NCBI GenBank assembly: GCA_038087875.1 | Contig: CM075989.1 | Location: 11,346,001-11,410,000, forward strand | Direction of reading: 5' to 3' | DNA: 64,000 nucleotides | From: Malacoraja senta | Taxonomy: Eukaryota | Shown here: positions 15,301 through 42,537 of the stretch, in pieces | How the letters are laid out: every line of letters starts with the position of its first letter | How positions within the stretch are numbered: position 1 is the first letter of the stretch | Notes under the pieces: generated by a model | Database searches by the model: none | The model's input: the letters and a program-made list of their open reading frames with translations, nothing else | What the model was told of the DNA's origin: nothing | Position numbers and translations under genes: made by a program

Positions 15301-15313
15301 TGTTCTTATGCTG

Positions 15314-21571: not shown

Positions 21572-21932
21572 CTGTGATAAGAGATTAAGCATCAGATGTA
21601 ACACAGTAACATGTAGTTTCCAAGTATACTTTCTTTAAACTTTTTTCCCTGGCAGCTAATACGCGCACCTTTTCCATAAACCATTGTTTTTCATGAATAA
21701 ACCCAGAGAGCGAGAGTCAGTCACAGTCTACATTACAAGCAAATCCAATCTTCTCCAAAGCCACAATGTGCCAGATAGCAAGGCTTTCCAGTCAGGAATC
21801 AGGAATGGAAATCCAGTTCCTAAACACAGATGGTTCCTGCCTTACCCCAACCTGCTACTGGGGACAACCTCTTAATATTTTATTTAATGCACAATAAAAA
21901 GCAATAAAAAATGAACAAATGTAAAATATTAC

Positions 21933-22070
21933 CTGTTGCACCGACCACTTCATTTGCGATAAGTCATCGGCATTGGACAATAGTATCTTCACCTTTGACC
22001 TCAAGGATATTAGAGGAATGTCCTTTGTAAGAGAATCCAGTTTTTTGAAGAAATTTATATTGTCTGATTC
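21933..22070 (-). CDS. STRC: Stereocilin exon 14, ESDNINFFKKL...IPLISL...KWSVQQ
   Basis: 138 nt, phase 0-0. End resembles human WELPWSEQQ. Confidence 0.88.
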
Positions 22071-23899
22071 CTGGCAATAAAAGCATAGACGGGTTTAACA
22101 AATGGAAATACACTGGATTTAGAATTAGCTGTAGAATCTTAGAATCAGGGACGATTGAGAGATCAGAATTGGAGAAGAACAGGTACCATGTTAATTAAAG
22201 AGATCATTGAAAGAGGGTGGGATGTGATCACAGAGGCAGGTATAAAGGTTTTGACTCGTAAGCTTGCTTAATTGGGAGACAGCACAGGTGACAAAGCACT
22301 CAAAGCTCTTACACGAACTGGAAATAATTAAGAAATAATATCACTAAATATATTTAACAAAGTAATTGAATGGTCTGATTTAGGAGACTGATTTCTGAGG
22401 TCAGTTTACTGCAGCATCAAGTTACTGTAAACTCAGACTTGTTCTTGGTACAAGTGAGGTGTCGGAATACTTTAACCAATCACTCACCTCGACCCGGTTC
22501 AAATATCATTCATTAATGAAACTTCACACTGCCAAAATCCCTTTACAAACTATAGGTTTATCTATAATTCAGGATCTGTCCAGCCACACAGTCCTTTGCT
22601 CTGCTACACCTTTATCAACTAACACTGATAAAGTAATCAAATATTTAAATTATTTTGAAATGTTAATTCCCTGATGTGATTAATGCAAACGTCATGGTCA
22701 AAATCATTGTTTTTTGATGTGTGGAAGGCTAAATGCCTAAATGCTAAATGCCTGTAGAATGCCTAAATTCTGTCAGTGTTATGGACACTGGAAAAGCAAG
22801 AACCATTTTCTTTAATAACAGGGGACCTCTTGGAGAGGGGCGAACATAAATAGTTCTGCTGGAGTAAATTAAGAGAGAAAATCTGGTGGCAGAAGGATTG
22901 GTAGTCGGCGATTGAAGGTGAGTGGCAAGAGAACAGGATTACATTTCTCAGTAGATTGTGATCTGGAAGAGAACACGTGTTTGGCTGGGACTCTACACCT
23001 CATCTTGGTGCACTGATTCATTCAAGGTCCAATGGAGTAGATTACCATCCTCAAAGGAATTCTCTCCAATTGTTCCCCTTTCCCAGCTTCTGCAGAAGAT
23101 TCAGGTCTGGCACTCTGTGCTTGAAGCTAGAAGATCATCATTTCAGACTACACTTTGCTGATTTGAGGATGTAATCTAGTTTGACATTGCTACACAATGT
23201 TGAGGGAGCACCATCTCTTGAATAAGACATTGAACCAAGCCTTCATCTATCTGTTCAAGTGAATGGAAAAGCAAACTCCCTGGTTCTGTTGTCCTGACCA
23301 ACATTTCCTACTTCTGTGGTACATGACCAACTCCTCAAACGGTGCTGGAATTTGCTTGGGATGAGGACAAAATCTCTTCTGGCATTGATTGTAGTTCAAT
23401 AACTATCAACATTTTATGGTTTGGATCCAAGCAACTTGATTTGATGGACTGTGCCGTGAAAGGAAAGGCAGTTGCAATTCTATTGCATCTTTCATGGACT
23501 CAGAACATCCCAAAACCTCACAACAAATTGAAGAGTAGTCACGGCTGCAATGCTGTATACTCTGCAGCCAATTTTCCTGCAATAAGCTCCTACAAGCAGT
23601 AAAGAGATAATGGTCAGGTCGGCCGTTTTAGTGATTTGACTGATGGATCAAAGACATCAGCTTGGCACAGGTTATATAGAGAGGGCTTCTCTCAAGGTCT
23701 CATCTGAAAGATGGGACCTTTGACTTACAGACTGTTCCTTCAGTGAGTTAAAGGACTGAACTGTAGTCCTTCTCCAGCTATTTGTCACTCCACCCACTGC
23801 AGGGGGACTTGGAAACCCTCGGATGCAAAATTGAAAGCCCCATTGCCTGAGGTATGTGACACAGAGTTAGATGAGTGAGTGAAGGTTTCTAATACCAAC

Positions 23900-24067
23900 C
23901 CAGAGCTTGTTTACAGCCATCAGTTTCTGAACAGGACTCAGTTTCCCCTCGTTTGCTGCCATGCTGGGTAAGATGTGCATGAGTAGAGCAGGTGGAATGA
24001 CTCGCAGTGTGTTCGGCCTGAGGCCAACCACAGTGGAGCCCAGACTGTCCAGCAGCTCCTCCGTAAT
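23900..24067 (-). CDS. STRC: Stereocilin exon 13, ITEELLDSL...GLRPNTLRVIP...LSPVQKLMAVNKLW
   Basis: 168 nt, phase 0-0. Resembles human GLSPQTLQAIP...LSACQ. Confidence 0.88.
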
Positions 24068-24166
24068 CTGCAGAGAGAAAGGAAGAGTGAGCAATGCTTC
24101 AAATCCTGTCCCACCACTGCTGGGGGCAACAGGTCTGGAACCCATTCTAACTGGTGCAATACTCAC

Positions 24167-24205
24167 AGATGTATTCTGTAGAATCTTGTCAATTATTGCC
24201 CTTGC
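24167..24205 (-). CDS. STRC: Stereocilin exon 12, ARAIIDKILQNTS
   Basis: 39 nt, phase 0-0, TTTCAG| and |GTGAGT boundaries. Confidence 0.82.
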
Positions 24206-25040
24206 CTGAAATAGACACAACAGATAGGTTATACAGACAGATACACAAACCCAAGACGTGTTTGACTGGAGTTCTGTTAAATTGAATCTTACACCAATTA
24301 AGAGAGAGAAGATTTGCAACACTAACATCACTTCTATAAATATAGTGAAATTAAATTTGAGATCATTTTACTTAGACTGGGCAGAGAGTTAGTATAGAAA
24401 CGGCACCACGTAAGAAATGGAAGCAGGAGGATGCCATTCAGCTCCATTGCACAGTAATTTTACTTATACTTGCTGACTATGACACCAATAGAGGCTGTTA
24501 GGCCCATCAACTCCATGCTGTTCCTACCTGAACAATCCCATCAATCTCTTTTGCCCTCTTCTTATTTCCCTGCGGTCCAGCCACATTCTCTCTCATGCAC
24601 CCATCTGCTCCCCTTTAGTTTATTAAGGGCAACCAAGGATACATGTTCCATTCCCGGGAATCTACTTTACTGGAGCTCCGTGCTTGTGCCCCCACCGACT
24701 TGTGTCCCTTTTCTTAGACCAGCTTGTGGCAGTCGTATCCACCGTGGACAAGGAGGAGGGGAACAGAAATGTCATTGTAACTTGCTTCATGATTCTAGAA
24801 CCACAACATGGTGTTTAACTAACGTAACCTACTGCTACCGTTAACAAATCCAATGAATCAAAAGTCTCCACCGCAGGCTGAAGCCTGAATTGTCCCAGCT
24901 ATCACAGTCAGAATGGCTGGCAGGTGGTGGACTGTGAAGTTGAAGTGCAGCCCACTCTCCCCAGCTCACTGTTATTGCAATATTTTATCGCCCATCAATC
25001 ATTCTCCTCATTCATAACCCCACAAACTCTGTTTCACTAA

Positions 25041-25291
25041 AGGGCCTGTCCCACTTAGGCGATTTTTTCAGCGACTTGCCGGCACCCGTCATAGTTGCAG
25101 CAGGTCGCCGAAAATGTTCAGAATGTTGAAAATCCAGCGGCGTCCAGAAACAGGTACGACTCTTTGTGCGACTACTTATGACCAAACAGGCATCACCCCC
25201 CGACATGTCGACACGTGACGCCTGTATGGAAAATTTTCGGCGACCTGCTGTGATAGTCGCCGAAGAAAATCGCGTAAGTGAGACAGGCCCT
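25041..25291. mobile_element. PIF/Harbinger-type MITE, second family
   Basis: TIRs AGGGCCTGTCCCACTTAGGCGATTTT and AAAATCGCGTAAGTGAGACAGGCCCT. TAA TSD at 25038-25040 and 25292-25294. Confidence 0.85.
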
Positions 25292-25431
25292 TAATTCAGG
25301 AAATCTTCTGAATCTCTTTTTTTTCTTCCCTCCTCCCAATTACAATTTCAAGAAAATCGGCTATAAACAGAATATTATAAAGATAAAACTGCAATTACGT
25401 GACAGTGCTGAATTAACCATAGAAATTGTAC

Positions 25432-25614
25432 CTGGGCAGAAGAGAGGTTTACTGTACTGAGCTCCGGGAGTATGGATTGGATCTGCACAGGGTGAAGCTG
25501 TTTTATAAAGGACAATCCCAGGATTGGGAGAAGACTAATCATACTCGACAACTCATTCGTTACCAAGAGTCCTTCATTTGTTATACCGTTTGTTCTGACC
25601 AAAAAATCTCTAAG
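25432..25614 (-). CDS. STRC: Stereocilin exon 11, LRDFLVR...LGLSFIKQL...LSSAQ
   Basis: 183 nt, phase 0-0. Resembles human LGLRFLQELSEPQLRAMLP...TPAQ. Confidence 0.88.
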
Positions 25615-25818
25615 CTGCACACACGAAGAGAAAGGGGCAATAATGACATTAGTAATAACATCATCCAGTAATTTCAAGATCATCCATACTGATACTTTTT
25701 CATTCCAGATTAAAATAATTAACATAGACTTCAGAAGCTCAAATGCAAGGCGGCAGATGTTTAAATTAAGCCTCTGGATTCTAGTCCAGCAACTTAGTTG
25801 CCACTGCTGAAGACTCAC

Positions 25819-25951
25819 CAGTTCATTTGGAACAAAAATCTCATCGCCAATGCAGTTCAATAGCTGTTCCTTGATAATAACAAACATTTGAAGATTCTGT
25901 TTGTAGGGTTTCAGATCCTGGGAGGATGCAGAACAAATCAATCTGCCCAGC
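25819..25951 (-). CDS. STRC: Stereocilin exon 10, LGRLICSASSQDL...LLNCIGDEIFVPNEL
   Basis: 133 nt, phase 2-0. Resembles human RLGPLACFLSPEEL...LLEC. Confidence 0.88.
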
Positions 25952-26954
25952 CTGGGAATAAGAGAAACGCAATAAACGCAATAAGAGTGGATCACACACA
26001 GTCTGTTCAACCAGTAAAGGGGAAAGGCATCTACAAGCAACACTCAATCCTTGTCTTCTCAAAAAGAGAGAAAAAAACGGATTGGCAGGAAAATGACAAG
26101 CTATAAAAGATCACAGTGATGAAACTAATTTGTCTGATCCATAATTCTCCCAACCCAGCAGTTCACTGACACCTTCAGCTCAGAAGAAAGCCATTCACCC
26201 CACTGTGTCAATGGCAGCTCTCTGAAACAGCATTCCAGTTGGTCTCACCTCCCTACCCTTACCTCACAGCCCTGTAAATATTTTAACCATTTTTACATTC
26301 TTGTACTTCCTTATAATGTAAGAGGCCATTTAGACCTTCATGTCAATGGTGACCCTCATAGCAATTCCCTTTCCCTACATTTTTCCCTAAAACCTATTTT
26401 TGTCAAGTTTCTCCAGGGGAACTTCCCTCCTTGATAATTCTTCCTTGCATATGAATTATTTTTCACTATCCTTGCTCTAATATCTGACTTTATTTTAATG
26501 CAACACTCAGAATTATCTTATCTTTAAGCATTTTATATAATTAAACTAGCTTGGGCTATCTGAGGTTTCTCACAGCTTGTTCTCCCTGTTCCCCAACATA
26601 GAATATAAAACAGTGAATGTGCTTCCGTCACTTTCCCTGGATGTGGATTCCAGGCCTTCACCCAATCCTCCTGCAGACTATCTGATACCAGATCGGTCTT
26701 GGATGCAGTTTGTTGACGCACGTTTTCCACCAGTCTCCCATGTGAACTGAGGTGGTGAAGGCAGAGACTCTCACAACATTTAAGAACCATCTGGACAAGC
26801 ACTGGAATTGCCATGGCATATGGGGCTACACACCAAGTGCTGGAGAATGGGATTAGAGTAGTTGGGTACTTGATGGTCAGTATGGATATGATGGTCCAAA
26901 GTGCCTATTTCTGTGCTGTGACTCTTAAAGACAATGAACAGTTGCAATACTCAC

Positions 26955-27070
26955 CTCTCAAAGTCAGAAGTTCCAATTGTTTTATCCCCTTTTAGGATGG
27001 TGTGGCTGAGAAACCTTTCCTGGACTGTCGTCAATTTATTGGCCAACAGCATATCCAATGCAGTGAGAAT
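26955..27070 (-). CDS. STRC: Stereocilin exon 9, ILTALDMLLANKL...SDFER
   Basis: 116 nt, phase 0-2, CCAG| and |GTGAGT boundaries, open frame. Confidence 0.85.
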
Positions 27071-28213
27071 CTGGTAAATGACAGAAAAGTTTCTGCCTCA
27101 TTGTGTAAATGTATTTCAGAGATTTCCATCCATTACAAATGAAATTCAAAAGTTAGTTGACTTATAGACACCGGAAGTACAATAGTAAGTGACTGACAAA
27201 AACAGCACAATAAATACTTTTTTTGTGTGTGAAGAAAAGGTGAGGATCCTGAGGATGGCAGCATTTGCGAGGTACGGTGTGGGGGAACATTTACACAAAG
27301 GGCGTTCATGGAGGAGGATTTGCACAGGGATTTGCATTGGAGAGAATTTGTATAAAGTCTATCTTAATCTTTCTCCCGATATTCATTTTTTCTGTTATCT
27401 TGTTTCTCTTAATACAATGTTAAGAGTGGAAAGAATCAAACAAAAGGACCCCAATTCTGAAACTACTTAATTAGTGACATTAGAGTATGTATATCCTGGG
27501 TCCATTGCAGTACCCTGATGATACTTCATTCTCGACTATACTGGTTAATTCCATTGATCGTAGAGATGTGATCAACTTCTTTCATAAAGTCTACAACAGA
27601 GCCAGCCAAGAGGGTGAGTAAACTGGAAAGTTGCCTGTCCAGGGAACCTGAGGTCTACTCTCCCTTGTTCTGTCTGACCATCATGCCTCATATATCATAC
27701 ATCATACTCTCCCACCATGTCTCTGGTTTCTCCCATCCCTGTTCAGATGCAAGTTTCTAAAATAAATCCAGTTAATGAACTGAATCAATTCTGACGGCTG
27801 TCTGAATGACTGGCTTCATGCTTCTTCCGACAGGGGGCCATTCATTCCCTGTTCAGATTTCTGTGTATGTGTCAGCCCTGCCTGAGCAATTTACATTCTC
27901 ATCTCTGGGCAGACAATGCTGCAGCCCACAGGGAATGTTTCCTTAGCACCGTTCAGACGATCTGCCACAATGGCCCAGTGCTTTTTTTTGGATGAGACAT
28001 CCAACTTGCTGTTGTTAAAAGACTTCATCCCACCATTTTAAAAAGCAGGGCGATATAACCTGGGTGTTCGGGCCAAACCACCAGTGAAGCGTGGTTTTTG
28101 TGGAATCTTCCTTCCTAGATTGCTCCCACGTTACGTGCATCAGAAATACTTCATGAACTGCAAAATGCTTTATGAGTCATCCCGAGTAATGCATGTTCCT
28201 TCTCTTACAGTAC

Positions 28214-28400
28214 CTGTGTACGGGACAGAAGCTGAAAGCTCTCAAACGGCAGGTATGCTAGCAGGTTACTGACATGGGTCAGGAACATCAGGGGCCAAGC
28301 CGACACACTGCTATAAGTCCCAGATGCCAGGATCCACTGGACGAAGGCTGCCTTCTGGTCATCAGACAGCTTCCCAGAAATCTGGTTGACCACAGCCATC
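28214..28400 (-). CDS. STRC: Stereocilin exon 8, MAVVNQISGKLSDDQKAAF...LPFESFQLLSRTQ
   Basis: 187 nt, phase 2-0. Resembles human EQKEALA...AWP...LPLENFLQLSPHQ. Confidence 0.92.
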
Positions 28401-29878
28401 CTGGAATAAAAAACATAACAGTGAATGAGAAGGGTGTTGTGCCCTGGATACCAGTCAATATCTCAGCATCATTGCAAAGCATTCGAGTGACCAAAGTAAA
28501 TACATCTGCCTTAAGGCCATAGCATCTAGAGATATACAGCACTGAAGGATGCTATGTAAACCCATCAAATCAGCTACTAGTTGCTAAGGAATATATAAAC
28601 TAATCTAATTCCAAACTCCCTACAACATATCAAGAGTTTTTAAAAAACATGATCAGGGTCTTTATCTCCATCATTGTTCGGGTAAGGTTCCATATCCCTC
28701 CATCTCTGAGTGAAAACATGTAAACCTTTGCTCCCTTCAACATCTCTACCAATTAGGTTAATCTATGCCTCAGTTACTTGTACAACTGGCCCTGAACCAG
28801 CTACCAATAATAAGAGATCACAATTAAGAAGCAAAGAAACCAAGAATTTGAAATAAAAACAGAAAAAAACTGGAGATACTGAGCCGTCCAGGCAGCATCT
28901 GTGGAGGGAGAAAAAGTGAACCTTTCAGGTTGAAGACCTTTCATCAGAACAGACCTGAAGCATTATTTATTTTTATCTTCTCAGATGCCTCCTGACTGAG
29001 AATTTCCATGAATTTCTTCTTTTTATATATAAAAATCACAATAATGCTTTGGTATTGGATGAAACCGGGTTTGAGTTGCAACATGTTCATGGAATATGAA
29101 GCATCTTCACCCCAAGTGCTGCTATAATATATCTTTTAAAATATTTACACCTTATCACATAAAAAACCCACAAAGTGGATCACCACAGACTAAGGAAAAA
29201 TTATGATTCAGAAGGAAACCTGTCTGATCTGTGTCAGTCTAATCCAGCCTTCCAGCATTATATCTGTAATCCTGCAGGTCATGACCAAGTAATATATCGA
29301 AGAACCATTTAAATGAACATTTCTGCCTCTCCCACTCTTTCCTGTCACAAGTTCTCAAGCGCGACAAGGCTGTGTGTGAAAATATTTGTCCTTATCTTTC
29401 TCTAATCCTTTCACCAATTACTTCACTCTGTGCTCCTGTGTTTTAGCCTATCTGCTAAGGGAAATTTACTTTTTCCCTGCTTTTACACATCAACGGTCAA
29501 TTCAAAGTTGTACGATAGTGACAACCCGAATGAAATAGGTAAAATTTTAAAATTCTTCAATGTCAATGTAAAAAAAGTGATCCAGAAAAGCAGTTCATAA
29601 TTAATCTTAATTGCCCTTTGACAGTCTTTTGCACTTGAAATAGACCCAAATTATCTTATGATTTGAATGAAATAACCAAGCCAAATGGGAACTCAATGGC
29701 TAAAAAATTAAATGAATCAGGTAATTTTAATTTGGAAAAGTTAGAATTTTGTTATAAAGCATTAAAGCACTCTGTATGTAACAGTTCCTACAAACAAATG
29801 TTGTGTGAAAAGGAGGGAAATAATCAAACAAAGGCATTAACTAAAGATCTTTAGCTGTTGAAGATACGTGTGACGCAC

Positions 29879-30033
29879 ACTTCCTCCTTGTCCAGGGTCA
29901 GTGGTAGAGCTCTGATTTCAGACGTTGACAAGTGAGGTAGAAAGTGAACAAATTCTTGGAACATATTTGGTTCAACGAGCAGTATTCTGTTGAAGAAGAC
30001 CAATGCCAGAATCCTCTTCAAATCTTCCGGAAT
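29879..30033 (-). CDS. STRC: Stereocilin exon 7, IPEDLKRIL...FLPHLSTSEIRALP...KEEV
   Basis: 155 nt, phase 0-2, donor GTGCGT. Resembles human LIPFLAVSDLMRFP. Confidence 0.85.
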
Positions 30034-31149
30034 CTGAAATTGGAAGACATATTGTAAAACTAGAAATCATTAACAAATCGTATTTACTCCAAAACAAATG
30101 TCTGTTTTTGGTTTACATTTAGTATTTAATAGTTTAATTATTCTTATCATTTTGATAGGCCTCTTTCACTGACTGTAACTCTCCTTACAAATAAAATGTT
30201 CTCATTTTTCTTTGTTGAATAATGTCAATTCCCAGCTTATTCTGCATGCCAGATGTAGCTAGTTCATGACAGAGTAAAGATGTTCATGATCAGTAAACTG
30301 CCAAGTCACTGATGTTCTCTAAGTAAGAGAAACAGCACCTTACAATCCCAAATGCCTATGAGTGTTTTGTTGAAGAATGAAATCTCAAAGGCTATGAAGG
30401 TGGCCAAGATCACATGCAGAAGGTGAGCCATCTGAATGTGCGTTATCTGTGGCTCACAGGAGAGGGGTGTGGGTCAAGTCCCACCTTAGAAACATGATCA
30501 CAAAAATAGAGTCTGACAATCCAGTGAGGGTTCTTGGAATGTCACACAGCTGGAGAAACGTTCTTTAAGATAACACATTGAGGTTCCATCTTGGGTGATT
30601 ATCAAAGACCCAGTGCCACTATTTCAAAGAACAGCAGTGAAAGTCTCTAAGATGTCCAATTTTAATTTCACTAGGAAGGTTCATCTAAAAACTAGAGCCA
30701 GGCCTTTCAGCAGTGGTTAGGCATTACTTCAGCACTGGCGGAAAGAGAACATATTTGTAAACAACAATTCATTTTGGATCACGTGCTAACTTTAGAAGTT
30801 AAATGAATAGATTTTTTGTTCACCAAAGATATCAAGGATTATCGAGAAAGGGTGATCTCAGGTCACGGATTAGCCTTGAGCTCGTTGGATATCTGAACAA
30901 CCTCTAACAGCTGCACAACATCCTTCTGGGTCCAAGATTCTACTTATCCCACAGCCAACTCCACTACAATTCATTAATTGCCATTTGTGGAGTTTGCTCT
31001 GTGCGAGTTAGCTGGTGTTGGGAAGGGCACAATGTAAATGCATTTGCTCTTGTTCTGTCTCCTCTGATAATAGTGGTGCATGATTATGATAAGGTACCTT
31101 TTTGCCTTGAAATACAGTTTGGCACCAAAGTGCATTAAATGGAATAGAT

Positions 31150-32110
31150 TAGTTTATTGTCATAGACATCAGGGTGCAATGAAATTCCTTGCTCACATGA
31201 AGCTCATAAAGTAAAGAGCATACATACAGCAATGATCAATACTACAATAAATACAATGACGAGTACAAAACAGCAGAATGGCGCAAGATTGAAGTGCAAA
31301 ACAATGATGGTAGAATAATGGAAATAACCCAATGAGGTAGAGTTGTGGGTGTGTGGCAGCATCTTTGAGAAAGGTGTGTGAACAAGGTGATTGGCTCTGG
31401 AGTATGATATCAGTGGGGAAGAAGTTGTTCATAAGTCTGAATTTCCAGGCTTTCAAGCTCCTGTATTTTCTCCCAGAAAGTTGAAGAGGGAGTGGCCAGG
31501 GTGGCCACAATACTTCCAGCTTTCCCTGATGCGACGCCCCATGAAGACTGACAAGATGGATGGAAGTGAAAGACTGGGCTGTGTACAGCACTCACTGCAG
31601 GTTCAGGCAGTCAAGAGCAGAGCAGTTGCCATACCAGACTGCGATGCATCCCCCCCAAATACTTTCTATAGTTCATCTGTAGAAGTTCGGGAGAATACTC
31701 ATGGACCTATCCAAATCTTCTTAGATGTCCACAAGAAAGGAACTATACTGACGTGCCTTATTGATCACCACATCGGAGTGAAAGGACAAGGTTACGTTGC
31801 TAATGATATGGATGCCTAGCTGTCCACCATCTCTACAGCAGCTCCGTTAATGAGGATTAGGTGTGTTCACCTCGTTCACTTACTTGGGTCAATAACTAAC
31901 TCTCATCTTGCTGACATCAAGAATTAGATTATTGTTGTAGATCCAACCTTCAACAGTGGTATCATGGGTGAACTCAAAGACTATGTTAGCATTGTATTTG
32001 GCCACACAGTCATGGGTATGCAGGAAGTAGAGCAAGGGGTGAGAACACAACCTTGAGGTACACAAGTGTTGAAATTCAGGGTGGAGGAAATGTTATGACC
32101 AATTCTAACC
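31150..32110 (-). mobile_element. Rex1/Babar LINE fragment
   Basis: Relic RT-region and LSGRKYRSL motifs on the minus strand. Confidence 0.7.
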
Positions 32111-32464
32111 TACTGAGTATGGTATTCAAGTCAACCATGATTCTGTTCATTTGGATTATTGTAATTGGAGATTATTATCATTAAATCTCACCTATCTTTC
32201 ACTTTATTGCAGCCAAACCCTTTTCATAACCCCCCCCCCCTTTCCTTGCCTACAAACATGCTCATAACTTGTATCTTTAACTTTTCCTAATTTTAATGTA
32301 AAAGCATTAATCTGAAGCAACTCTATTTCTTTCTATACTGATGGTGTCTGGGCTGTTGAAAATGTCCAGCATTCTGTGTTTAGTGCAGAAGTTATGTTTC
32401 CATTTAATGGACTGCCAACCTATCTTCAAAGGATTCAAAAGGTTTCAGGTATTAAAGTGTTTAC

Positions 32465-32575
32465 CTGCAAACTCTTCCATCTTGTGTTTAGGAGGTACAG
32501 CAGCTGTTTCAGATTTTGAATGTCAATTGCAAACAGTGCCACTTGAAGATCGCTTGCAGAAAGCTTCATGTATTC
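32465..32575 (-). CDS. STRC: Stereocilin exon 6, EYMKLSASDLQ...RWKSLQ
   Basis: 111 nt, phase 0-0, AG/GT boundaries. Resembles human AYLHMPPENLQQL. Confidence 0.87.
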
Positions 32576-33973
32576 CTGTTTGGAAAAAGGTAAAGAAAGA
32601 CCTCTGAAAAAGCACAGGAGCAGATTTCATTCAACTGGTGAATGAAAAAGATGGCAGCTTTCTATCAGTTGTCTTTTGAAAAATGATCGATGTTGGCAAT
32701 GCCAGTATTTACCATCCACCGTGAACTTAAGAGTCATATAGTCATAGAGCATGGAAACAGGTCCTTCGGCCCAACTTGCCCATGCCGACCAAGATGCCCC
32801 ATCTACCTTAGTCCCACCTGCCCACGCTTGGTCCATATTCCTCCAACGTTCTTTAACAGTCGGTGTAATTAAGAGGCAAGAACCCTGGGGTCACACTTAT
32901 GACAGACGGGAAAGGATGGCTGATACCCTAAAGTGAAGTATGTTCGTGAAACCGATAATTTTATTGTGCCAATCCAATAGATTCATTTTACCATTACTTA
33001 GACGGTGAGTTTAATTCCTCACTTAGTTATTTACTTACTCAATACAATGTGAACTCACTTCTCAGGATCAATGAATCCAGGTGATGCACTGTGCACTAAC
33101 CATTGTGAAGATCATTAGAGTGGAATCTAATATTTCTGTTTTTAGGTGAGTTCTATGGGCATGAACCACATAGCCCCCAGAGCTGTAAGAATATGAGCCA
33201 GTTTACATCATGTGGCACCTTTAATATAGGAAACAATCTCAAGGTTTCGCACAAGAACACAACCAAACTGGAAGTGAAAACAGATATCTGGGCTGATAAG
33301 CACCTCTATATGCCCACTTATACCGTTAACAACAGATCTTGTTCTTAGAATTTATCTATTGATGAGCTGATCCTTTCCAAATCTCCAGTACATTCCAGAA
33401 GATGCAAATAGAGACATGGAACATGAACTTTGCTGGATTGGAAAAGCTCAAAAGCCATGCTTTAGATGGTTAAGGGGGTTTGATAGAATCAAATTAGTTA
33501 CAATATCATGAATCTGGATAGAGAATCCAGATAAATGTCTATTTCCCACCATGGCAGCTGGGAGTCTAAATTTAGTAAATTAAATAATCTGGAATTAAAG
33601 AAAAGGATAATATCAGTAGTGGTGGTCATGAAAATCACTTCAACTAAAAGCCCACCTGGTTCATTGACGTTCTCCAAAGGGAAATGCCATTCTTTCCTGC
33701 TCTATCCTAACAGCCGAAATCTAGCTGACTCCCAATGGTCATGTCAGCAGACGTGATAACCATATGCTATGAACGAATAAATACCCTCCCACTACACATA
33801 TACCTGGCTGGTCCAGGCTGTAATTCAACGAAATATAGGTGGTGTTGGAAACCCACACACTGACCAACTGTGCACGCCAAAGGTCAAAGGCAGCAGCAGT
33901 CTGCCTGTCATACTGGATAGGGATTCAAAGCTACTGAGGTTCAGGTCGTGCTCAGACAACTATCCATGGGCTG

Positions 33974-34063
33974 CAGACACAAAATGCTGGAGTAACTCAG
34001 CGGGACAGACCGCATCTCTGGAGAGAAGGAATGGGTGCGTTTCAGGTCGAGCCCCTTCTTCAG
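33974..34063 (-). mobile_element. About 90-bp Penelope-terminus mini-element
   Basis: Flanked by ACTATCCATG(G/T)GCTG direct repeats. Same terminal consensus as the 15314 element. Confidence 0.72.
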
Positions 34064-34466
34064 ACTATCCATGTGCTGTGTTCACTGAAAAAAACACAAC
34101 AATTCACACTTGTAATTGAGTCTAAATAGCTTGTGTTTCTCTTCTGCACTTTAATAGGAATCCTAGTTGGCAACACTTCAATAAATGACAGCACTGTCTG
34201 ACATGGAATTGATTGTTGCACAGGTTGTACACCATTGAAACAGACCATTCAGCCCAACATTGTACATGCTAGTATTTATGGTCCAAAAGAGCCTTGTCCA
34301 ACCCTAACCATATCTCACGCCATCAACATATTATCCCATTCTTTTCTCTCACTCATGTTTATCTTTCCCTTACATTTTATTTATACCTCTAAATGGAGGG
34401 CTCCTTCTTTAGTGCATATATATGTATTTAACATTGTTAAACATCTGTTTAATGATGATACAATAC

Positions 34467-34526
34467 CTTTACCAGGCCCACACCTGAAGATCCTCCTTCC
34501 TTCTGCACCAAGTCCAATAGCACAGA
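34467..34526 (-). CDS. STRC: Stereocilin exon 5, SVLLDLVQKEGGSSGVGLVK
   Basis: 60 nt, phase 0-0, canonical splice sites. Resembles human PVLWDLLQREK. Confidence 0.85.
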
Positions 34527-35836
34527 CTGAGGAAATAAACAAAAAATAACCCAGTAAAACCAATGGCATGAGTGTAAATATCAGAATGCCTATACATGCA
34601 ACTCCAGTTAGGGGGTGAGGGATATAGCCTTGTGGAAGAACTCACAAAACAAAGAAGAGTTTACAGAGTTTACTTATAAATGTTTCTGTTGACCATGACT
34701 GAAACAATAGCGATGCCTCCCAATTAAAGCAGGCTCACTTTTTCATCAAAATACATGGTGAGAATAGCTGCAAAAAAAAATTAATGCCTGTCGCTTACAA
34801 TAGTGTGGTCTCCAGGTCACCCAATTACCTCCACTCTGGCCAACAAATGCAACCAGTAAATGTCAAGTTAGGAACTGAGGAGCACTGCTCTGCTCTTCTT
34901 TGAATAATACCACATGATCATTCACATTCAGGTGGTGCCTTGGTTTACCATTTAATGTACAAGGTAGCATCTCCAAAGTGTAGCAATACCTTAGATTGAG
35001 CAGGTAGAGTTAGCCTTGAAACTGCACCACATGAGAAATGGAAGCAGCAGCAAGCTATTCAGCCCTTCACCTGCTCCATTACACAGTAAGATCACGTCTG
35101 AACTTTTATCTCAGTGGCACTTTCCTGCATTATCTCCATAAAGATCTCGGTCAAATACTCAGCAATAGGGTCTCCAGAATCCTTCAGAAGATAACTCCAC
35201 AGATTTATTAATCCCTAATGGCCGACCCCTTATTTTAAGACTGTGACCCGGTTCCTGAGCTAGGGGAAACACCAACTCGCATGAACATTGTCAGGTCTGT
35301 TAAGAATGTTTCAGTGAGTTCATTTCTCATTCTTCTACAGTCCAGGGAACAGGCCCAGACTACAATCTCCCTTGATGGGACAAACTAACCATCCTAGGAA
35401 ATGATCTGGTGCACATTTACTGAACTCTATCCCAGGGATATCCTGTGATCCTCCAGCTATTGACCCAGCCACCCACTGGGAAAGCACAAATACCTCAAAC
35501 TAGAGTTTTAAAACTGACTAAAGTCCAGCAAAGGAATTACACAGGAGTGCATCAACAATTTTTACTTTAACTTGGTTACAGGGTCCTACACTAATGATGG
35601 ATGTAACCAGATCCAGAGTCGGTGAACTCAAGTTCTTGAGTAAAACACAAAATGCTAGAGGAATTCAGTGGGTCAGACAGCATCTGGCCATGGAATGGAC
35701 AGGACAGATGATGTTTTGGGTCTGAAGCCTTCTTCAGACTAGAGAAGTTCAAGTTCTTGGATTGAGCAAGACTGTGAGTAGTCAGTGAAAGCAATGCTGA
35801 GTTAACCGTGGTCATTAACAGGGCAGTATCCCTTAC

Positions 35837-38276
35837 CCCAAAACACTGGAGCACCTCTCTTTTGATCCTGTAGCTCTTTTGATGATGCAAATAGTCTATC
35901 ACAGTGTAAAGGACGTGATTCCTTGCATTCTGAAGCAGCTGAAGGGATGAGATTACATCATCCTCCAATGCCACAAGCCCTAAAACGACCTTGTTTATGG
36001 CCTCTGTGAGCCCAGTAGTTAGCTCCTCGGCAGATGTGCTGCCTAATGTGAGGCCGATGTGTTCCAAACCGCAGAGGACCAAGGCAGGAACATCTGCCAG
36101 CCGGAGCAGCTGGTGTGCGCAAGGCCCTGGCGTGCCCTGGCTGCAGGTCCACTCGAGTCTTGAGATGAGATCCTGCACGGGGCAGACTTCGGTCTCCTGA
36201 GGAGTGGTGGAGTTGCTGATCGACAAACAGTCTTGTTCAACCCAGGAGTTGTCCGGGTCGCTGGTCAGGGCGTGAAGCACTCCAGGGTCCCGGCAGACCA
36301 ATGTGTTGAAATTGTCCTGATCGTGGTCGAAGCAGAGGGCCACGGTTGTTGGGTCCACTCGATGCACTGTCCAGGAGCTATATCTACACATGATGTCTGT
36401 GTCTATCCCATCTACTTGGGTGTGGGCACAGTAGGCAGCGAGCCAGGTGCCCTCTCCACTGTTCAGGAGCTCCCACAATCGGGTAGAGTTGTCACACGCA
36501 ACTTGTACAAAATTGTCCACGTCATACTGACTGCAATACTCAACGGTGGCAGGGTCTATGGAGGCGGGTCCCGTCCACTCCTCATAGCGGCAGCTGGTGT
36601 TACCGGTTGCCTGGATGTTACACGGAGACTGCAACCACGCGTTCTCGGGATACTGCAGAAGCTTAATGATCAGCGCCTGGTCTTGACAGACAAGTCGGGA
36701 GAAATTCGCCTGGTCGTTCGACCAGCAGAAGTCCACGAGGTAAGGGTCGACCGGCTCCTCAGCCCACTGACTGTACTGGCAGACCGCCGCCGGCTCGGTC
36801 ACGTTCACCTCCCAAGAGGAAGGAGGGCCGCAGAAGTCAACGAGCCAGAGGTTGTACGGGTCGTTCAACAGCTGCTGGAGAACAGCTGGATTCTGACACA
36901 CCCAGATGTTGAACTGCTGGGCGTCGCTGTTGAAGCACAAGGCGACCACGGTGCTGTCCACGGCCGCCGGGCGCGCCCACGTCCCGTAGTGGCACAGATC
37001 GCCCACGGCTCCGATCAGGTCCCATGGACCGGCGGTGGGAGAGGCCGGCGAGCCCGGCTCCGGGAAGGCGGACACTGCTGGGACGTCGCAGACCTGGCGC
37101 AGCCAAGCGTTGTCCGGGTCGGCCAGCAGTTGCTCCAGGAGCGCGGCAGATGTGCAGACCATCAGGTCGAAGGTGGAGGGGTCAAAGTCCCCGCAGAGGA
37201 CCACCAGGCTGGGGGGGACAGGCGGCGCTCCCAGCCACTCCTCGTAGTGGCAGCGTTGCTGGGCTCCACAGGCGGGGGGCAGCCACTCGTTGTCCGCCTC
37301 CTGGCTCAGCTTGTGCAGGAGGCTGGCGCTGCCACACACCGAGATGTTGAAGTTGGCCGGGTCACTGGTGCGGCACAGGGCCACGATGGAAGGGTCGGGC
37401 AGCTCCTGCTCCCAGCGGCTGTACTGGCAGAAGGCGCTGTAGCTGTAGCCCAGGCCGCCACCGCTGCACAACCAAAGCCCCAGCGGCTTCAGAGCCGAGC
37501 CGGGCCCGCACACGGCGGCCGAGAAGCCGGCACCGTCCTCGCTGGCGCAGAAGGAGAGCAACTGGTGGTCGGCGGGGGGCGAGGATGCCCACTCCTGGTA
37601 GCGGCAGTGAGCGGCCACGCTGAAGGCCGGGGCTGTCCCCGGGCCGAGGACGTCTACAGTCGCGGGGATCGAGGCGAGAGGGTCGGGGGAGAGGGAGCAG
37701 AAGGCTTCCAGCCACGAGTGCGCCGGGTTCTTCATCAGGGCTCCCAGCAGCGATGCATTGCCGCAGATAGCCCTCCTAAAGGCGGCCTCGTCCACCACCG
37801 AGCAGTACCCGACGTCGGTGGAGTTGATGAAGTCGGCGCCGTAGTTGCAGGTCTGCGCTCCCAGCTGGCGGGTCTGGCGGGTAGAAGGGTGGCTCCTGGA
37901 TCCAAGTCCCCTGGACACGCAGTGCTGGAGGAAGAGGTCGGCTCCTTGGGTCACGGATGTGGACACCAGGGCCACGCTCCTGCAAACGCGCTCCATCAGG
38001 GGAGCCGCCCCTCTCGCTGCCAACCCCCGCACGACGCCGCAGACCCCGGGCAGCCAGGCCGGCAGCGACTGCCGCCGCAACGCTTCCCCGCAAACCGTCC
38101 TGTTCGTCCAAAGCCACAGGTCCTGGTCGCAGTTGATGGGGACGTCTGGAAGTTTGGAGATCAGCTGGAAAACGCGAGCAGTTGCCCGGGGCTGGGCTGC
38201 TGAGCCAGACTTGACGATCTCTGCGACATCCAGCGGAACAGCTTCGAAATTCCACGACAGGTTGTGAAGTCGGCCC
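35837..38276 (-). CDS. STRC: Stereocilin exon 4 (2440 nt), GRLHNLSW...REVLQCFG, containing the Cys-repeat array
   Basis: Lies within ORF 35591..38425. Start resembles human RHNLSW and end resembles ELLACFS. CGCAG| acceptor and GGG|GTAAGG donor. Confidence 0.93.
36227..37849 (-). repeat. Array of 8 four-Cys protein repeats within STRC exon 4
   Basis: Units start at 37849, 37606, 37429, 37252, 36994, 36781, 36592 and 36388. Approximate consensus CxYxxW-x(12-13)-C-x3-D-x3-F-x4-C...W[LV]-x3-C; units 1 and 2 are the most divergent. Confidence 0.92.
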
Positions 38277-38594
38277 CTGCGTGGACAAAAGGATGACCAT
38301 TTAATAAACCCTATCCCAGAATCATAGAAGAGTACAGCATAAGTACAGGCCCTTCGACCCTCAATGTATGTGCCAAACACACTGCCAAGTTCATCTCTGC
38401 CTGCACGTGATCCACATCTCACCAATGCCTACATAAGTTCACAAGAGACAGGAACAGAATTAGGCTATTCGGCTCGTACGCCATTCAATCATGGCTGATC
38501 TATCTTTCCCTCTCAACCCCATTCTCCTGCCTTCTCCCCATAACCCCTCACACCAATACACATCCACGTGCCTACCTAAACGCCTCTTAAAAGT

Positions 38595-39000
38595 TTAGTT
38601 TATTGTCCCATGAACCGAGGTACAGTGAAAAGCGTTTTTGTTTTGTTTTGTAGAAAGACTATACATGATTATAATCAAGCCGTCCAGTGTACAGACACAT
38701 GAAAAAGGGAATAACATTTAGTGCAAGATAAAGTCCAGTAAAGATAGTCTGAGGGTCTCCAATGAGGTACATGGGAGGTCAGGAGCACTCTCAATGTGGA
38801 TGGTTCAGTTGCCTGTTGGTAGCTGGGAAGAAACTGTCCCTGAATGTGGAGGTGTACGTTTTCACATTTCTGTATCTGTTGCTTGACAGGAGAGGGGAGA
38901 AGAGGGAGTGAAAGGAGTGAGACACGTCCTTGATTGTGCTGGGGGCCTTGCCCAGGCAAGGCAGCGTGGTGTAGATGGAGTCAATGGAAGAGAGGTTAAA
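38595..39000 (-). mobile_element. Rex1/Babar-derived 3' fragment (related copies at about 9420-9820 and 10380-10660)
   Basis: CLGKA.S.IKD.SH...RYR motif and a shared ACAATAAACTAAAC tail. Confidence 0.7.
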
Positions 39001-39861
39001 GCTACTCTTGTATCTGCTACCACCACCACGCCTGGCAGTGTGCCCATGCACCCACCAATCACTCACTGTGTAAAAAAAAAACACCCTGCGCATGTCCTTT
39101 AAACTCATCCTAAAGCTATGCCCTCTGGTCTTTGATAATTCCACCCTGGGAAAAAGCTCTAACAGTCTACCCTATCTTTACCTCTCATGATTTTATATAC
39201 TTCTATCAGGTCTCCCCTTAACCTCTGACGCTCTTGAGAAAACAATCCAAGTTTGTCCAACCTGTCCTTAGAAATTTCCCTACATTAGAGGGGCAGATGG
39301 CCCCAGTCTGGGGACAGCGCGGAGACACACGTTATCATGAAATATACCCTCTAATCCAGAAACTCTCCATGCCTCCTAAACTCCAAACCTGGAGATATTG
39401 TTGTCAATAGATCAATGACAATCACGCAGGAGAGATAAGCTTTGCATTTCTGTAGCAATAAATGAATCAGCATCTCAGCACTGCTTGTGGGATATCTCAG
39501 AGCAGAAAATGCCTGTTACCTTTTATGCAGCAAAACGGGCCATTTGGCCCATCAACTCTGTGCAATCCCTCGATGCCATTCCCACACTTATTTCCCTGAC
39601 ACCATTCCCTCTCGCAGAATCACACCTCGATTCGCTGATCACTTACACAGGTCACGAGGCTGGCTGTATAGTGGCATTATGTGGGCTTTCTTAAATATGA
39701 TCAAATGCTGTCTAAGTTTTGGATGATATCTCCTCTAATCAGAAATACATTTCTCCTGAGGAGAGTGGCTGTTTCAATTACCGTCACTCACATCCCCCTC
39801 ATCCATATGTCTATATTTCCTTATCACATACAAAAGGGAAGAAGCTTGTTCTGTAACTTAC

Positions 39862-39886
39862 CAGTTGAGAAGCTGGTTCAGATTCC
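39862..39886 (-). CDS. STRC: Stereocilin exon 3, 25-nt microexon GNLNQLLNW
   Basis: CACAG| and |GTAAGT boundaries. Resembles human GNLQQLLLW. Needed to bridge phase 1 to phase 2. Confidence 0.9.
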
Positions 39887-40589
39887 CTGTGAAGATATGA
39901 AATAAGAATTAACAAAATTATATATATGACTGCTAAATCAACACACTCACAACGAGACTTCAACAACGGGAATGCTAGCAGGTTTGGGAAGGGAACGGGG
40001 GGAGTTGCCCAAACAGACTACAGGGAGGTGATTGACGATGGGAGGGACAATCGATGGGTAATGTTACGCTGGGTCCTGTTGGTGGAACAGATCAGAGCTC
40101 AGACCCCCAAAGATTTTGAGTTCAATTCTCCCGCAGGACTCGACTCCACAGCCTTCGGACTCAGAGATAAATTTCACCCACTGAGCCACACCTGAACCCT
40201 GTTGGGATCACACACTTGCAGGCCACCTTGATTTATTTAACAGAAGTTGGGATTAGGACTGATGATTCATCCTCTCTTGCGTGTTCCATCTATTTGCAAT
40301 GACCAGTTTGTCCAGAAATTGACACCTATTATGACAACTAGGTAACAATGATGAATGACTGGACAACTTAGATGGTCATGGAGAAAATTCCATGGTGTAA
40401 CTTAATCCCACCCTCAATAGAGTTTCCCTGAATGGACCACTGTCACTCTGCTCTGTCCTGCAGCCCGACAACCCACCAGTTTACAATCATATTGCAAAAC
40501 CTGGGAGTCTACAAGCTGTAGACCTGGACTATACAGCCCTAGGAAGGAAAAAATCCAGGCAAACAGCAAAGAGACAACAATATTTACTA

Positions 40590-41305
40590 GGTACAGAAAA
40601 ATGCTGGAGAAACTCAGCGGGTGCAGCAGCATCTATGGAGCGAAGGAAACAGGCAACGTTTCGGGCCGAAACCCTTCTTCAGACTGATAGGGGGTGGGGA
40701 GAAGAAAGGAAAAAAGGCGGAGGAGGAGCCCGAGGGCTGGGGGAGGGGAGGAGACAACCAGAGGGCTGATGAAGGGGAGGGGACAACAAGGGCTAGCAGA
40801 ATTGGGAGAATTCAATGTTCAAGCCCCCAGGATGTAGACTGCCCAAGTTGGTTATTGCGGACCGACCGGAGGTGTTCGGCGAAACCTGACCTCCCGGTGG
40901 CTCAGCACTTCAACTCCCCCTCACATTCCGTATCTGACCTCTCTGTCCTGGGTCTCCTCCATGGCCACAGCGAGCAACACCGGAAATTGGAGGAAATGCA
41001 CCTCATATTCCGCTTGGGCAGTCTACATCCTTGGGGCTTGAACATTGAATTCTCCCAATTCTGCTAGCCCTTGCTGTCCCCTCCCCTTCATCAGCCCTCT
41101 GGTCGTCTCCTCCCCTCCCCCAGCCCTCGGGCTCCTCCTCCGCCTTTTTTCCTTTCTTCTCCCCACCCCCTACCAGTCTGAAGAAGGGTTTCGGCCCGAA
41201 ACATTGCCTGTTTCCTTCGCTCCATAGATGCTGCTGCACCCGCTGAGTTTCTCCAGCATTTTTGTGTACCTTCGATTTTCCAGCATCTGCAGTTCCTTCT
41301 TTAAC
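40590..41305. mobile_element. Penelope-like element remnant with inverted termini (foldback)
   Basis: About 258-bp inverted arms (40590-40847 and 41012-41270). The spacer encodes a GIY-YIG-type C-terminal fragment (PDLPVAQHFNSPSH...RKLEEMHLIFRLG). 16-bp TSD ACAACAATATTTACTA at 40574 and 41306. Confidence 0.88.
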
Positions 41306-41412
41306 ACAACAATATTTACTATTTCTCAGCAGGATTTCAATCCAGGTTCTATGGACTCAAATATAATTATGGTCCAGATAGTATTAACTGGCTTAATTCT
41401 GTGGTTGAACAG

Positions 41413-41620
41413 CTGTGTGTGTGTGTCTGTGTGTGTGCCCGCACATGTGCATGTGTATGATTGTATATCAGTGTATGTCTGCATACATGTTTGTGTGTCA
41501 GCATGTGTCTGTTTTTATAGTTATGTGGATGTGTGTACACGTTTGTATGTGTGCATGTTTGTGTGATGTGGAATGTGTATGGGAGGTGAGTATACACGTG
41601 TGTGCATGCATGCATGTATC
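41413..41620. repeat. Degenerate (TG)n microsatellite
   Basis: Direct inspection. Confidence 0.9.
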
Positions 41621-41718
41621 TATCTGGCTTCTCACATGAAGGAAATCAATGCCTTTCGGGGAATGGGGGGGACAAAAAACACTGACAAGAAAGCACTGAA
41701 TGTATTGTAGCGCCTTAC

Positions 41719-42537
41719 CTTGGGGGCATTGTCCCATTCCATCCAATTTAATTATATTGCTTGCAAAGAACATTCCCTCCAAGAAAATGTCCGTTAGCTT
41801 CAATGATATTTGTTTTGCCACTTTACAAAGATAGGAGTCAAAAAATGGAAACATATTCTGACTAAAGAAATGCCAAATAGTCTTTAGCCCAAAATAAAGA
41901 ATCTGTTGCACCTTCCCAATGAAACTTAACAGCAGGTTTGGAATATTAAAGCCATCCTTCCACATTCTGGAGCGATCTTCATGAACACTGGATGAAAGAA
42001 ACACTTGGGCAAAATCACTTAATGATCTTCTATTCATAGATGAAGCAAAATAACACGCTTCCTCCTGCATGGACAGCAATAGAGCTTTCCAATTAACTCC
42101 AAATGAACTCAACAGCTCCTCAGCAAGTGCAAAGAGAGGTCTAAAGTCTTCAGTTTCCTGAAAAATGTACAGAAGTAGCTGAGGTAGCATTCGCTGCAAC
42201 CCCAACCCAATGTCTCCAAGCTGACTATTATATAGAACCTGTAACATTATGGAATACAATTCCCACTTGTTCTCTGGAATGATGTTGGACATTATCATCT
42301 GGATGACCTCTGGGAGAGCAGAATATCCCTGGCGTGTCTGCACACTGAGCTTCTGGTCCAAAATCTTCCATAGTGATTTACTGGAATCATTTAGTTCAGG
42401 AGATAACTGGGGACTCTTCACTTGTGCCTCTATCTGTGATTCTCCTGTTGTGGTCAGTGTTTTAGTGTGTTCCCGGATTGTAGTATTCACAGATCTCTTC
42501 CAGCCTCGAGAAATTTGTAGTTTCTTAGGGAAAGAGC
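41719..42537 (-). CDS. STRC: Stereocilin coding exon 2 (819 nt), GSFPKK...DGMGQCPQ
   Basis: TTTTTCCTTCAG acceptor and AAG|GTAAGG donor, phase 1-1. The end GQCPQG resembles human ...NGQCQG. Confidence 0.88.

What the first reader, a model, noticed from the sequence alone, without database searches (positions are those of the whole stretch)
36227..37849. Stereocilin with an expanded array of 8 four-cysteine modules in a single exon
Seen: exon 4 encodes 8 tandem units of about 50 aa joined by Pro/Ser/Thr linkers of variable length, for example CQYSQWAEEPVDPYLVDFCWSNDQANFSRLVCQDQALIIKLLQYPENAWLQSPC. All four Cys, the Tyr, the D-x3-F motif and the distal Trp are kept in every unit, and the proximal Trp in units 2-8. 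Several N-glycosylation sequons occur (NST, NAS, NIS, NVT, NFS, NTS). The units are highly diverged from each other, so the expansion is old and constrained. Recalled knowledge: human STRC has only about 3 degenerate C...F...C...W...C segments here and is about 1775 aa, whereas this protein is already 2080 aa before its last exons. Inference: this is a discrete disulfide-bonded extracellular repeat domain, possibly not yet named. Its copy number could set the length or valency of hair-bundle links to the cupula or otoconial membrane in elasmobranch ear, lateral line or electroreceptors.
Basis: partly seen in the sequence, partly recalled or inferred. Interest (0 to 1): 0.8.

Follow-up and report, generated by a model that had tools for sequence, protein, structure and literature searches.

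The report
Lateral-line stereocilin paralogue's four-cysteine repeat array
The eight four-cysteine repeats are real, but the gene is a skate copy of strc1, the fish-and-amphibian sister of the human deafness gene STRC, and the same unnamed repeat occurs 3 to 15 times across that protein family.

Summary
Observation confirmed. On the minus strand, one 2,440-nt exon (38276-35837) encodes eight tandem 47-55 aa modules at exactly 37849-36227. All four Cys, the Tyr, D-x3-F and the distal Trp are present in every unit.

Interpretation only partly right.
- The gene is not the orthologue of human STRC. Two trees put it in a separate old clade with teleost strc1 / "Stereocilin 1", coelacanth and frog genes. 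STRC proper forms the sister clade, and sharks and rays carry both genes.
- Eight units is not an elasmobranch expansion. A profile search of 1.84 billion proteins found multi-unit arrays only in anamniote stereocilin-family proteins. Most teleosts, sturgeon and coelacanth have 6, sharks, rays and bichir 8, frogs 9-14, Umbra 12 and a salamander 15.
- STRC proper keeps 6 degenerate units in chondrichthyans and 3 in bony vertebrates, including primates.

The module has no Pfam model, no PDB sequence match and no convincing structural match. AlphaFold2 folds a single unit confidently as a compact all-helical domain (pLDDT 89) and leaves the long linkers disordered.

In zebrafish, strc is ear-specific and the strc-like gene is neuromast-specific, so a lateral-line role is the best inference.

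No RNA data were available. Disulfide pairing could not be tested.

The parts
35837..38276 (-). Single large coding exon (2,440 nt, 813 codons plus 1 base, 42 Cys) of the skate strc1-type stereocilin paralogue. It holds an N-terminal Cys-containing stretch, the 8-unit array and the start of the Pfam 'Stereocilin' region.
   Evidence: ORF; splice sites; tblastn of orthologues; weak PF21058 hit at ORF aa 829-873
37697..37849 (-). Unit 1 (51 aa; lacks the proximal Trp; carries NST and NAS sequons)
   Evidence: (53.5 bits)
37466..37606 (-). Unit 2 (47 aa; shortened C3-C4 segment; the most divergent unit)
   Evidence: (42.9 bits)
37268..37429 (-). Unit 3 (54 aa), joined to unit 4 by only 5 residues
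   Evidence: pLDDT about 90 across units 3-4
37088..37252 (-). Unit 4 (55 aa)
36830..36994 (-). Unit 5 (55 aa). This is the unit folded alone.
   Evidence: (74.7 bits)
36620..36781 (-).
36428..36592 (-). Unit 7 (55 aa)
36227..36388 (-). Unit 8 (54 aa). The last unit of several other strc1-clade proteins matches it best.
1522..42478 (-). Extent of the gene inside the window. There is a large upstream exon at 42478-41699, the repeat exon, and about 20 small C-terminal exons down to 1638-1522. The last exons lie beyond the window start.
   Evidence: tblastn of Mobula, Stegostoma, Amblyraja and Narcine orthologues

Best explanation
The stretch is the core of one large exon of the skate orthologue of strc1 ('stereocilin 1' or stereocilin-like). 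strc1 is the ancient sister gene of the deafness gene STRC, kept in cartilaginous fishes, bony fishes, coelacanth and amphibians and not found in amniotes.

The exon encodes eight tandem copies of a family-specific module of about 55 aa: C-x-Y-x2-W-x(12-13)-C-x3-D-x3-F-x4-C-x(16-17)-W-L-x3-C. Each copy is predicted to fold on its own into a compact bundle of short helices that looks like a single ARM/HEAT-type repeat. The four invariant Cys presumably form two disulfides. The modules are separated by linkers of 5-31 residues, of which the long ones are predicted to be disordered, and the array carries several N-glycosylation sequons.

Shown here: the repeats, their conservation, the gene's clade, the spread and copy number of the module, and its predicted fold.

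Inferred: the protein is extracellular, like STRC, which builds the horizontal top connectors and tectorial-membrane attachment crowns of outer hair cells. On that reading the array is a semi-flexible, disulfide-stapled, glycosylated stalk or multivalent binding region in the N-terminal half, ahead of the conserved ARM-like superhelical C-terminal half. Because the zebrafish strc-like gene is expressed only in neuromast hair cells and strc only in the ear, the skate gene most likely serves lateral-line hair bundles, for example coupling the bundle to the cupula, and possibly other lateral-line-derived receptors.
For: - Repeats and exon.
- Clade placement: on whole proteins, clade A (window, elasmobranch 8-unit genes, Latimeria, frogs, teleosts including Pygocentrus 'strc1') has SH-aLRT 99 and clade B (STRC of chimaera, sharks, rays, teleosts, amphibians, sauropsids, mammals) 100. 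With the repeat region removed the values are 100 and 98.
- Both genes occur in Heterodontus, Stegostoma and Narcine.
- Source names of multi-unit hits: 'strc1' in Narcine, Pygocentrus and Amphiprion, and 'Stereocilin 1' in Xiphophorus.
- Synteny: the last CTDSPL2 exon lies upstream on the same strand, as in the fused Latimeria model P0009. A frog STRC-clade model is fused to CKMT1.
- Module spread: the profile search of 1.84e9 representatives gave 39 hits. All named ones are stereocilin family and the multi-unit ones are all anamniote.
- No named domain: no Pfam family and no PDB sequence match.
- Fold: single unit pLDDT 88.7, pTM 0.73, all-helical. Six units give pLDDT 73 and pTM 0.39, with linkers below 50. 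Only weak matches to ARM, HEAT or PUF pieces.
- Constraint: units are more conserved than linkers. Indels in two related species' DNA contigs are in frame or compensated.
- Expression precedent: zebrafish STRC is ear only and CR293520.1/strc-like neuromast only (PMC4619078). strc1 is listed as a lateral-line marker (bioRxiv 10.1101/2022.09.08.507120). strc is absent from wild-type lateral-line hair cells (PMC12361438).
- STRC link function: PMC12789471 and references therein.
Against: - No RNA evidence for this species. The four runs that hold the exon are genomic, because their contigs also cover the introns.
- The equation 'zebrafish CR293520.1 = strc1 = clade A' rests on gene names given by databases and papers. 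No zebrafish sequence was placed in my tree.
- Disulfide pairing and extracellular location are inferred. No model coordinates were available, and no signal peptide or GPI signal was examined.
- The low pTM of the six-unit model, made from only 22 aligned sequences, does not decide between beads-on-a-string and a continuous solenoid.
- Absence from amniotes is absence from a protein library, not from genomes.
Confidence: 0.75

Rival explanations
1. One reading: this is the elasmobranch orthologue of human STRC, in which a 3-unit region was expanded to 8 units in the elasmobranch lineage.
For: NCBI calls several orthologues simply 'stereocilin' (Hypanus, Mobula, Heterodontus, Stegostoma, Amblyraja). 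Primate and rodent STRC do have 3 degenerate units.
Against: Both trees separate the window's clade from the STRC clade with support of at least 98. Sharks and rays have a second gene that groups with mammalian STRC at about 32% identity, against about 25% for the window's clade. Arrays of 6-15 units occur in bony fishes and amphibians.
Confidence: 0.04
2. The units are not autonomous domains. They are ordinary ARM-type repeats of one continuous superhelix, like the rest of the mesothelin/stereocilin superfamily, with cysteines as local staples. On this reading 'module' and 'linker' are artefacts of shallow modelling.
For: The weak structural neighbours of both models are all alpha-solenoid pieces such as importin-alpha, Vac8, designed ARM proteins, Puf and AP adaptors. 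Units 3-4, joined by 5 residues, are modelled with pLDDT of about 80-92, including across the junction. Mesothelin's spiral is also stapled by two disulfides (PMC10035497). Stereocilin was predicted to be ARM-like (PMC2628672).
Against: A single unit folds confidently alone (pTM 0.73). The 30-31 aa Pro/Ala/Ser-rich linkers vary in length between species (22-42 and 17-42 aa) and are poorly conserved and predicted disordered. Copy number changes freely between 6 and 15, which is easier for beads than for a packed solenoid. The best structural scores are below significance (Z of 4.3 or less, Foldseek E of 0.1 or more).
Confidence: 0.2
3. The exon is a decaying or non-expressed remnant, that is a pseudogene or an exon skipped in mature mRNA.
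For: No RNA run holding the exon was found.
Against: The frame is open for 813 codons with canonical splice sites. All 32 unit cysteines are kept. One-to-one unit conservation holds across sharks and rays. Indels in related species are in frame or compensated. The downstream exons are intact and about 93% identical to Amblyraja.
Confidence: 0.02

Closest known systems
Stereocilin (STRC, DFNB16 deafness gene) of mammals and other vertebrates
   Same: Same protein family. The C-terminal half is homologous (Pfam PF21058 in the orthologues; 25-26% identity, E about 1e-135 to 1e-140). The same four-Cys module type sits at the same relative position before the conserved half.
   Different: It is a paralogue, not the orthologue. 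STRC has 3 units (bony vertebrates, mammals) or 6 units (chimaera, sharks), most of them truncated to three Cys. The window gene has 8 complete units.
strc1 / 'stereocilin 1' / strc-like of teleosts (zebrafish CR293520.1, a neuromast-specific hair-cell gene)
   Same: Same clade in both trees, represented by Pygocentrus strc1. The architecture is the same: N-terminal region, array of complete four-Cys units, then the stereocilin C-terminal half.
   Different: Most teleosts have 6 units where the skate has 8. Outside elasmobranchs, one-to-one unit correspondence is clear mainly for the last unit. No function or structure of the array is published, as far as the held literature shows.
Mesothelin / otoancorin superfamily (ARM-type superhelix with stapling disulfides)
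   Same: All-helical short-helix repeats, extracellular, disulfide-stapled (PMC10035497, PMC2628672). The weak structural neighbours of the unit are ARM/HEAT pieces.
   Different: The unit profile found no mesothelin or otoancorin among 1.84e9 proteins and none in the PDB. Those proteins are not reported to have a tandem four-Cys unit separated by linkers.

Membership tests
Stereocilin family (Pfam PF21058 'Stereocilin') | Match to the PF21058 profile in the region after the Cys-rich part | tested here: met
   The window exon holds only the first 45 profile positions (20.6 bits, below the 26.6 cut-off). All orthologues, including the roughly 93%-identical Amblyraja protein, carry PF21058 in the precomputed Pfam column, and their exons map along the window.
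STRC proper (orthologue of human DFNB16 gene) | Groups with mammalian, sauropsid and amphibian STRC in a gene tree | tested here: not met
   The window gene falls in the sister clade, with support 99-100 for its own clade and 98-100 for the STRC clade.
strc1 (stereocilin 1) clade | Groups with genes named strc1 or Stereocilin 1 in teleosts | tested here: met
   It shares a starred clade with Pygocentrus strc1. Narcine strc1 is its batoid orthologue. Amphiprion strc1 and Xiphophorus 'Stereocilin 1' are multi-unit hits of the module profile.
strc1 (stereocilin 1) clade | Array of at least 6 complete four-Cys units before the conserved C-terminal half | tested here: met
   The window has 8 units, and other clade members have 6-15.
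strc1 (stereocilin 1) clade | Expression in lateral-line (neuromast) hair cells, as for the zebrafish gene | not testable with these tools
   No RNA run holds the exon. The precedent exists only in zebrafish (PMC4619078).
   AlphaFold2 on one unit with a 77-sequence alignment gave pLDDT 88.7 and pTM 0.73, with four helices. This is a prediction only.
   The four Cys are invariant in 77 diverse units. Model coordinates are not returned, and the Cys presence/absence patterns were uninformative.
Any named Pfam domain or solved fold for the unit | Significant sequence or structure match | tested here: not met
   Pfam: nothing on the units in the ORF scan at E up to 1, and only scattered chance matches (best E 0.037) among the 46 units scanned singly at E up to 10. 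PDB sequences: best E 0.23. VIA-align wide: best Z 4.3. Foldseek AFDB clusters: E of 5 or more. Atlas: TM 0.58 or less to unrelated helical pieces.

The most novel reading that the evidence does not exclude
The four-Cys unit is an undescribed, autonomously folding extracellular domain specific to the stereocilin family. Its tandem copy number (3 in mammalian STRC, 6-8 in fishes, up to 15 in salamander strc1) would tune the reach or valency of hair-bundle links. strc1 would be an ancient lateral-line-dedicated stereocilin that was lost with the lateral line in amniotes.
Probability: 0.3. Interest if true: 0.6.

Novelty: new member of a known kind. Interest (0 to 1): 0.4.

Why it matters
STRC is one of the commonest causes of recessive hearing loss, yet the N-terminal half of the protein has no described domains.

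This window shows the clean form of a repeat that is eroded in mammals. That gives a profile that recognises three degenerate units in primate and rodent STRC, which could help in reading missense variants at the conserved Cys, Trp and Phe positions.

It also shows that vertebrates had two stereocilins before cartilaginous and bony fishes split. One of them is found only in animals with a lateral line. Its repeat number varies 2.5-fold between lineages, which is a natural experiment on link architecture that can be tested in zebrafish or Xenopus.

For the genome scan itself, the result is mostly a correction: a paralogue was mistaken for an orthologue, and the 'expansion' is a family trait.

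Tried and rejected
- **Plus-strand reading:** the translation gives no homologues of note. The 656-aa antisense ORF is a by-product of the exon's high GC.
- **First two word-indexed protein searches:** these returned few hits and no tetrapods. Tetrapod STRC appeared only when the other elasmobranch paralogue was used as query.
- **RNA evidence:** The look-up of sequencing runs listed six holders, none on record as RNA, and the four that were laid proved to be genomic.
- **Structure searches of the six-unit model:** Swiss-Prot AFDB and PDB gave only E of 0.1 or more, to ARM proteins. Mouse stereocilin appeared at rank 25 with E 0.28, which is not usable.
- **Single-unit structure searches:** nothing significant.
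- **Protein atlas by features:** no usable hit.
- **Disulfide pairing from Cys loss patterns:** almost all incomplete units are alignment truncations, so the test was uninformative.
- **Literature:** no paper linking Strc to ampullary organs and neuromasts. No paper describing the Cys repeat.
- **Earlier scan notes:** none on stereocilin elsewhere in this genome.

Full report
**What is there**

Translating 36227-37849 on the plus strand gives nothing recognisable. The minus strand holds a 944-aa open frame, 38425-35591.

The coding exon runs from 38276 (acceptor cgcag|G) to 35837 (donor G|GTAAGG). That is 2,440 nt, 813 codons and 42 Cys, of which 32 lie in the units.

The one correction concerns the linkers. 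Only the two long ones (30 and 31 aa) are Pro/Ala/Ser-rich. The others are 5-16 aa and of mixed composition.

**Is it more than chance?**

Each unit scores 34-68 bits against an HMM built from the other seven window units. The best of 2000 shuffles of the same unit reaches at most 16 bits. Units are 30-46% identical to each other (mean 37%), so the duplications are old.

**The gene**

tblastn of orthologues maps a multi-exon gene on the minus strand from 42478 to 1522 and beyond the window start. The exons are about 91-100% identical to the Amblyraja radiata 'stereocilin' fragment, so the genome is a skate.

Pfam finds only the first 45 positions of PF21058 'Stereocilin' at the end of the exon, and nothing on the repeats.

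**Which stereocilin?**

Protein searches showed two sets of elasmobranch proteins.
- Set A contains Narcine 'strc1', Hypanus, Mobula, Heterodontus and Stegostoma 'stereocilin' and the window gene. All have eight positionally matching units.
- Set B contains Narcine, Heterodontus and Stegostoma 'stereocilin', Pristis and Rhinoraja 'stereocilin-like', and Callorhinchus. These are 25-27% identical to set A but 31-38% identical to turtle, bird and mammalian STRC.

A maximum-likelihood tree of 32 proteins, rooted on a tunicate relative, gives two clades.
- Clade A holds the window gene, elasmobranch set A, Latimeria, three frogs and four teleosts including Pygocentrus 'strc1'. Its SH-aLRT support is 99.
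- Clade B holds chimaera, sharks, rays, teleost strc, amphibians, sauropsids and mammals. Its support is 100.

Repeating the tree on the C-terminal part alone, with every repeat column removed, gives the same split at 100 and 98.

The duplication therefore predates the split of cartilaginous and bony vertebrates. The window gene is the strc1-type paralogue, not the orthologue of human STRC.

Synteny agrees. The last CTDSPL2 exon lies upstream on the same strand, at 59085-58963, matching the fused CTDSPL2-stereocilin model of Latimeria. A frog clade-B model is fused to CKMT1. From my own knowledge, CKMT1 is the neighbour of human STRC.

**How widespread is the module?**

A profile of 46 units (alignment A1) was scored against 1.84 billion representative proteins. 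It gave 39 hits at E of 0.001 or less.

Every hit that carries a name is a stereocilin-family protein. The unnamed strong hits are nearest to teleost or frog clade A, or to alligator STRC. Three weak metagenomic hits (E about 1e-4) have no similarity to the family.

Units per protein, counted at per-domain E below 1e-3:

| Lineage | Units |
|---|---|
| Pleurodeles (salamander) | 15 |
| Rhinoderma and Pelobates (frogs) | 13 (14 matched stretches each) |
| Umbra (teleost) | 12 |
| Pyxicephalus (frog) | 9 |
| Sharks, rays, Erpetoichthys (bichir) | 8 |
| Most teleosts, Latimeria, Acipenser | 6 |

No amniote protein has a multi-unit array.

With a profile iterated on clade B, STRC proper shows 6 units in chimaera and shark (5 in the sawfish Pristis and only 2 detected in Narcine). 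The first and last are complete and the inner ones are three-Cys. Bony vertebrates show 3 units in most models, including gerbil, gibbon and chimpanzee (2 detected in one teleost, one bird and one lizard model).

Within elasmobranchs the eight units correspond one to one. Skate units are 43-78% identical to the matching Narcine, Mobula and shark units, against 0-60% for the linkers, whose lengths also vary. Outside elasmobranchs only the last unit matches unit 8 in several clade-A proteins.

DNA contigs of two related species carry only in-frame or compensated indels inside the exon.

**Is it a known domain?**

- The 46 units scanned singly against Pfam at E up to 10 give only scattered chance matches.
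- The profile finds nothing in PDB sequences (best E 0.23).
- AlphaFold2 on one unit, with a 77-sequence alignment (A3), gives pLDDT 88.7 and pTM 0.73. The model has helices at residues 18-27, 29-37, 40-46 and 55-59.
- Six units (alignment A2, 22 sequences) give pLDDT 73 and pTM 0.39. Units 3-4 are at about 90, and the long linkers are below 50.
- Structure searches give nothing significant. The weak neighbours are pieces of ARM, HEAT, PUF and TPR solenoids. This fits the ARM-type prediction for the family (PMC2628672) and the disulfide-stapled spiral of mesothelin (PMC10035497).

I found no paper that describes this repeat. InterPro, SMART and CDD could not be queried.

**Function**

STRC, together with otogelin, otogelin-like, tubby and TMEM145, builds the horizontal top connectors and tectorial-membrane attachment crowns of outer hair cells (PMC12789471).

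In zebrafish, STRC transcripts are ear-only and the second gene, CR293520.1/strc-like, is neuromast-only (PMC4619078). Later work lists strc1 as a lateral-line marker and strc as an ear marker (bioRxiv 10.1101/2022.09.08.507120). strc appears in lateral-line hair cells only in prdm1a mutants (PMC12361438).

Clade A is found only in vertebrates that have a lateral line. Together with the zebrafish data, this makes a lateral-line role the best-supported reading for the skate gene.

The array itself is most simply a glycosylated, disulfide-stapled stalk or multivalent binding region. These steps are inference. No RNA data exist here, because the runs that hold the exon are genomic. Disulfide pairing could not be examined either.

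**Verdict**

The module is real, discrete in prediction and unnamed in Pfam. But the 'expansion relative to human STRC' compares paralogues, and eight is an ordinary count for strc1-type genes.

The gene is a new member of a known, annotated family. The modest novelty lies in defining the repeat and in the two-paralogue history. Interest 0.4.

Noticed in passing
window 36000-38200 (inside the repeat exon): A sharp GC island is confined to this one exon. GC is 0.55-0.705 and GC3 of the array is 0.81, against 0.42-0.47 in the flanking introns and GC3 of 0.33-0.66 in every other exon of the same gene. Batoid units look richer in Ala, Gly, Pro and Arg than shark units. The cause is unknown; GC-biased gene conversion is one possibility.
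   Followed up: partly
window 36233-38203, + strand: A 656-aa stop-free ORF lies antisense to the repeat exon. It is most likely a by-product of the exon's GC3 bias. No homology search was done on it.
   Followed up: no
window 58963-59085, - strand: This is the last coding exon of CTDSPL2, 83% identical to aa 425-465 of the Latimeria fused model P0009. CTDSPL2 therefore lies head-to-tail upstream of the strc1-type gene, as in coelacanth.
   Followed up: partly
window 38039-38101, - strand: A possible degenerate half unit (RTVC...AWLPGVC) lies upstream of unit 1. It resembles the C3-to-C4 part of the module. The Mobula counterpart scored only iE=5 against the unit HMM.
   Followed up: partly
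window 32650-32850, 33850-34250, 35050-35250, 35450-35836, 38250-38420: Intron segments have contig depths thousands to millions of times the single-copy level in all four genomic runs, which points to very high-copy interspersed repeats. Many joints at 33975 and 34037 mark element ends.
   Followed up: no
window 37445-37455 (linker between units 2 and 3): One related species (run X3) has a +1 insertion and a -1 deletion 10 nt apart. This is a compensated frameshift confined to a linker. Other indels in the exon are 6, 12 and 21 nt.
   Followed up: no
P0075 (Umbra pygmaea) and P0074 (Pleurodeles waltl): Lineage-specific re-expansions of the array. Umbra shows a duplicated block of about four units, and the salamander has 15 units. 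These are gene models and were not checked against DNA.
   Followed up: partly
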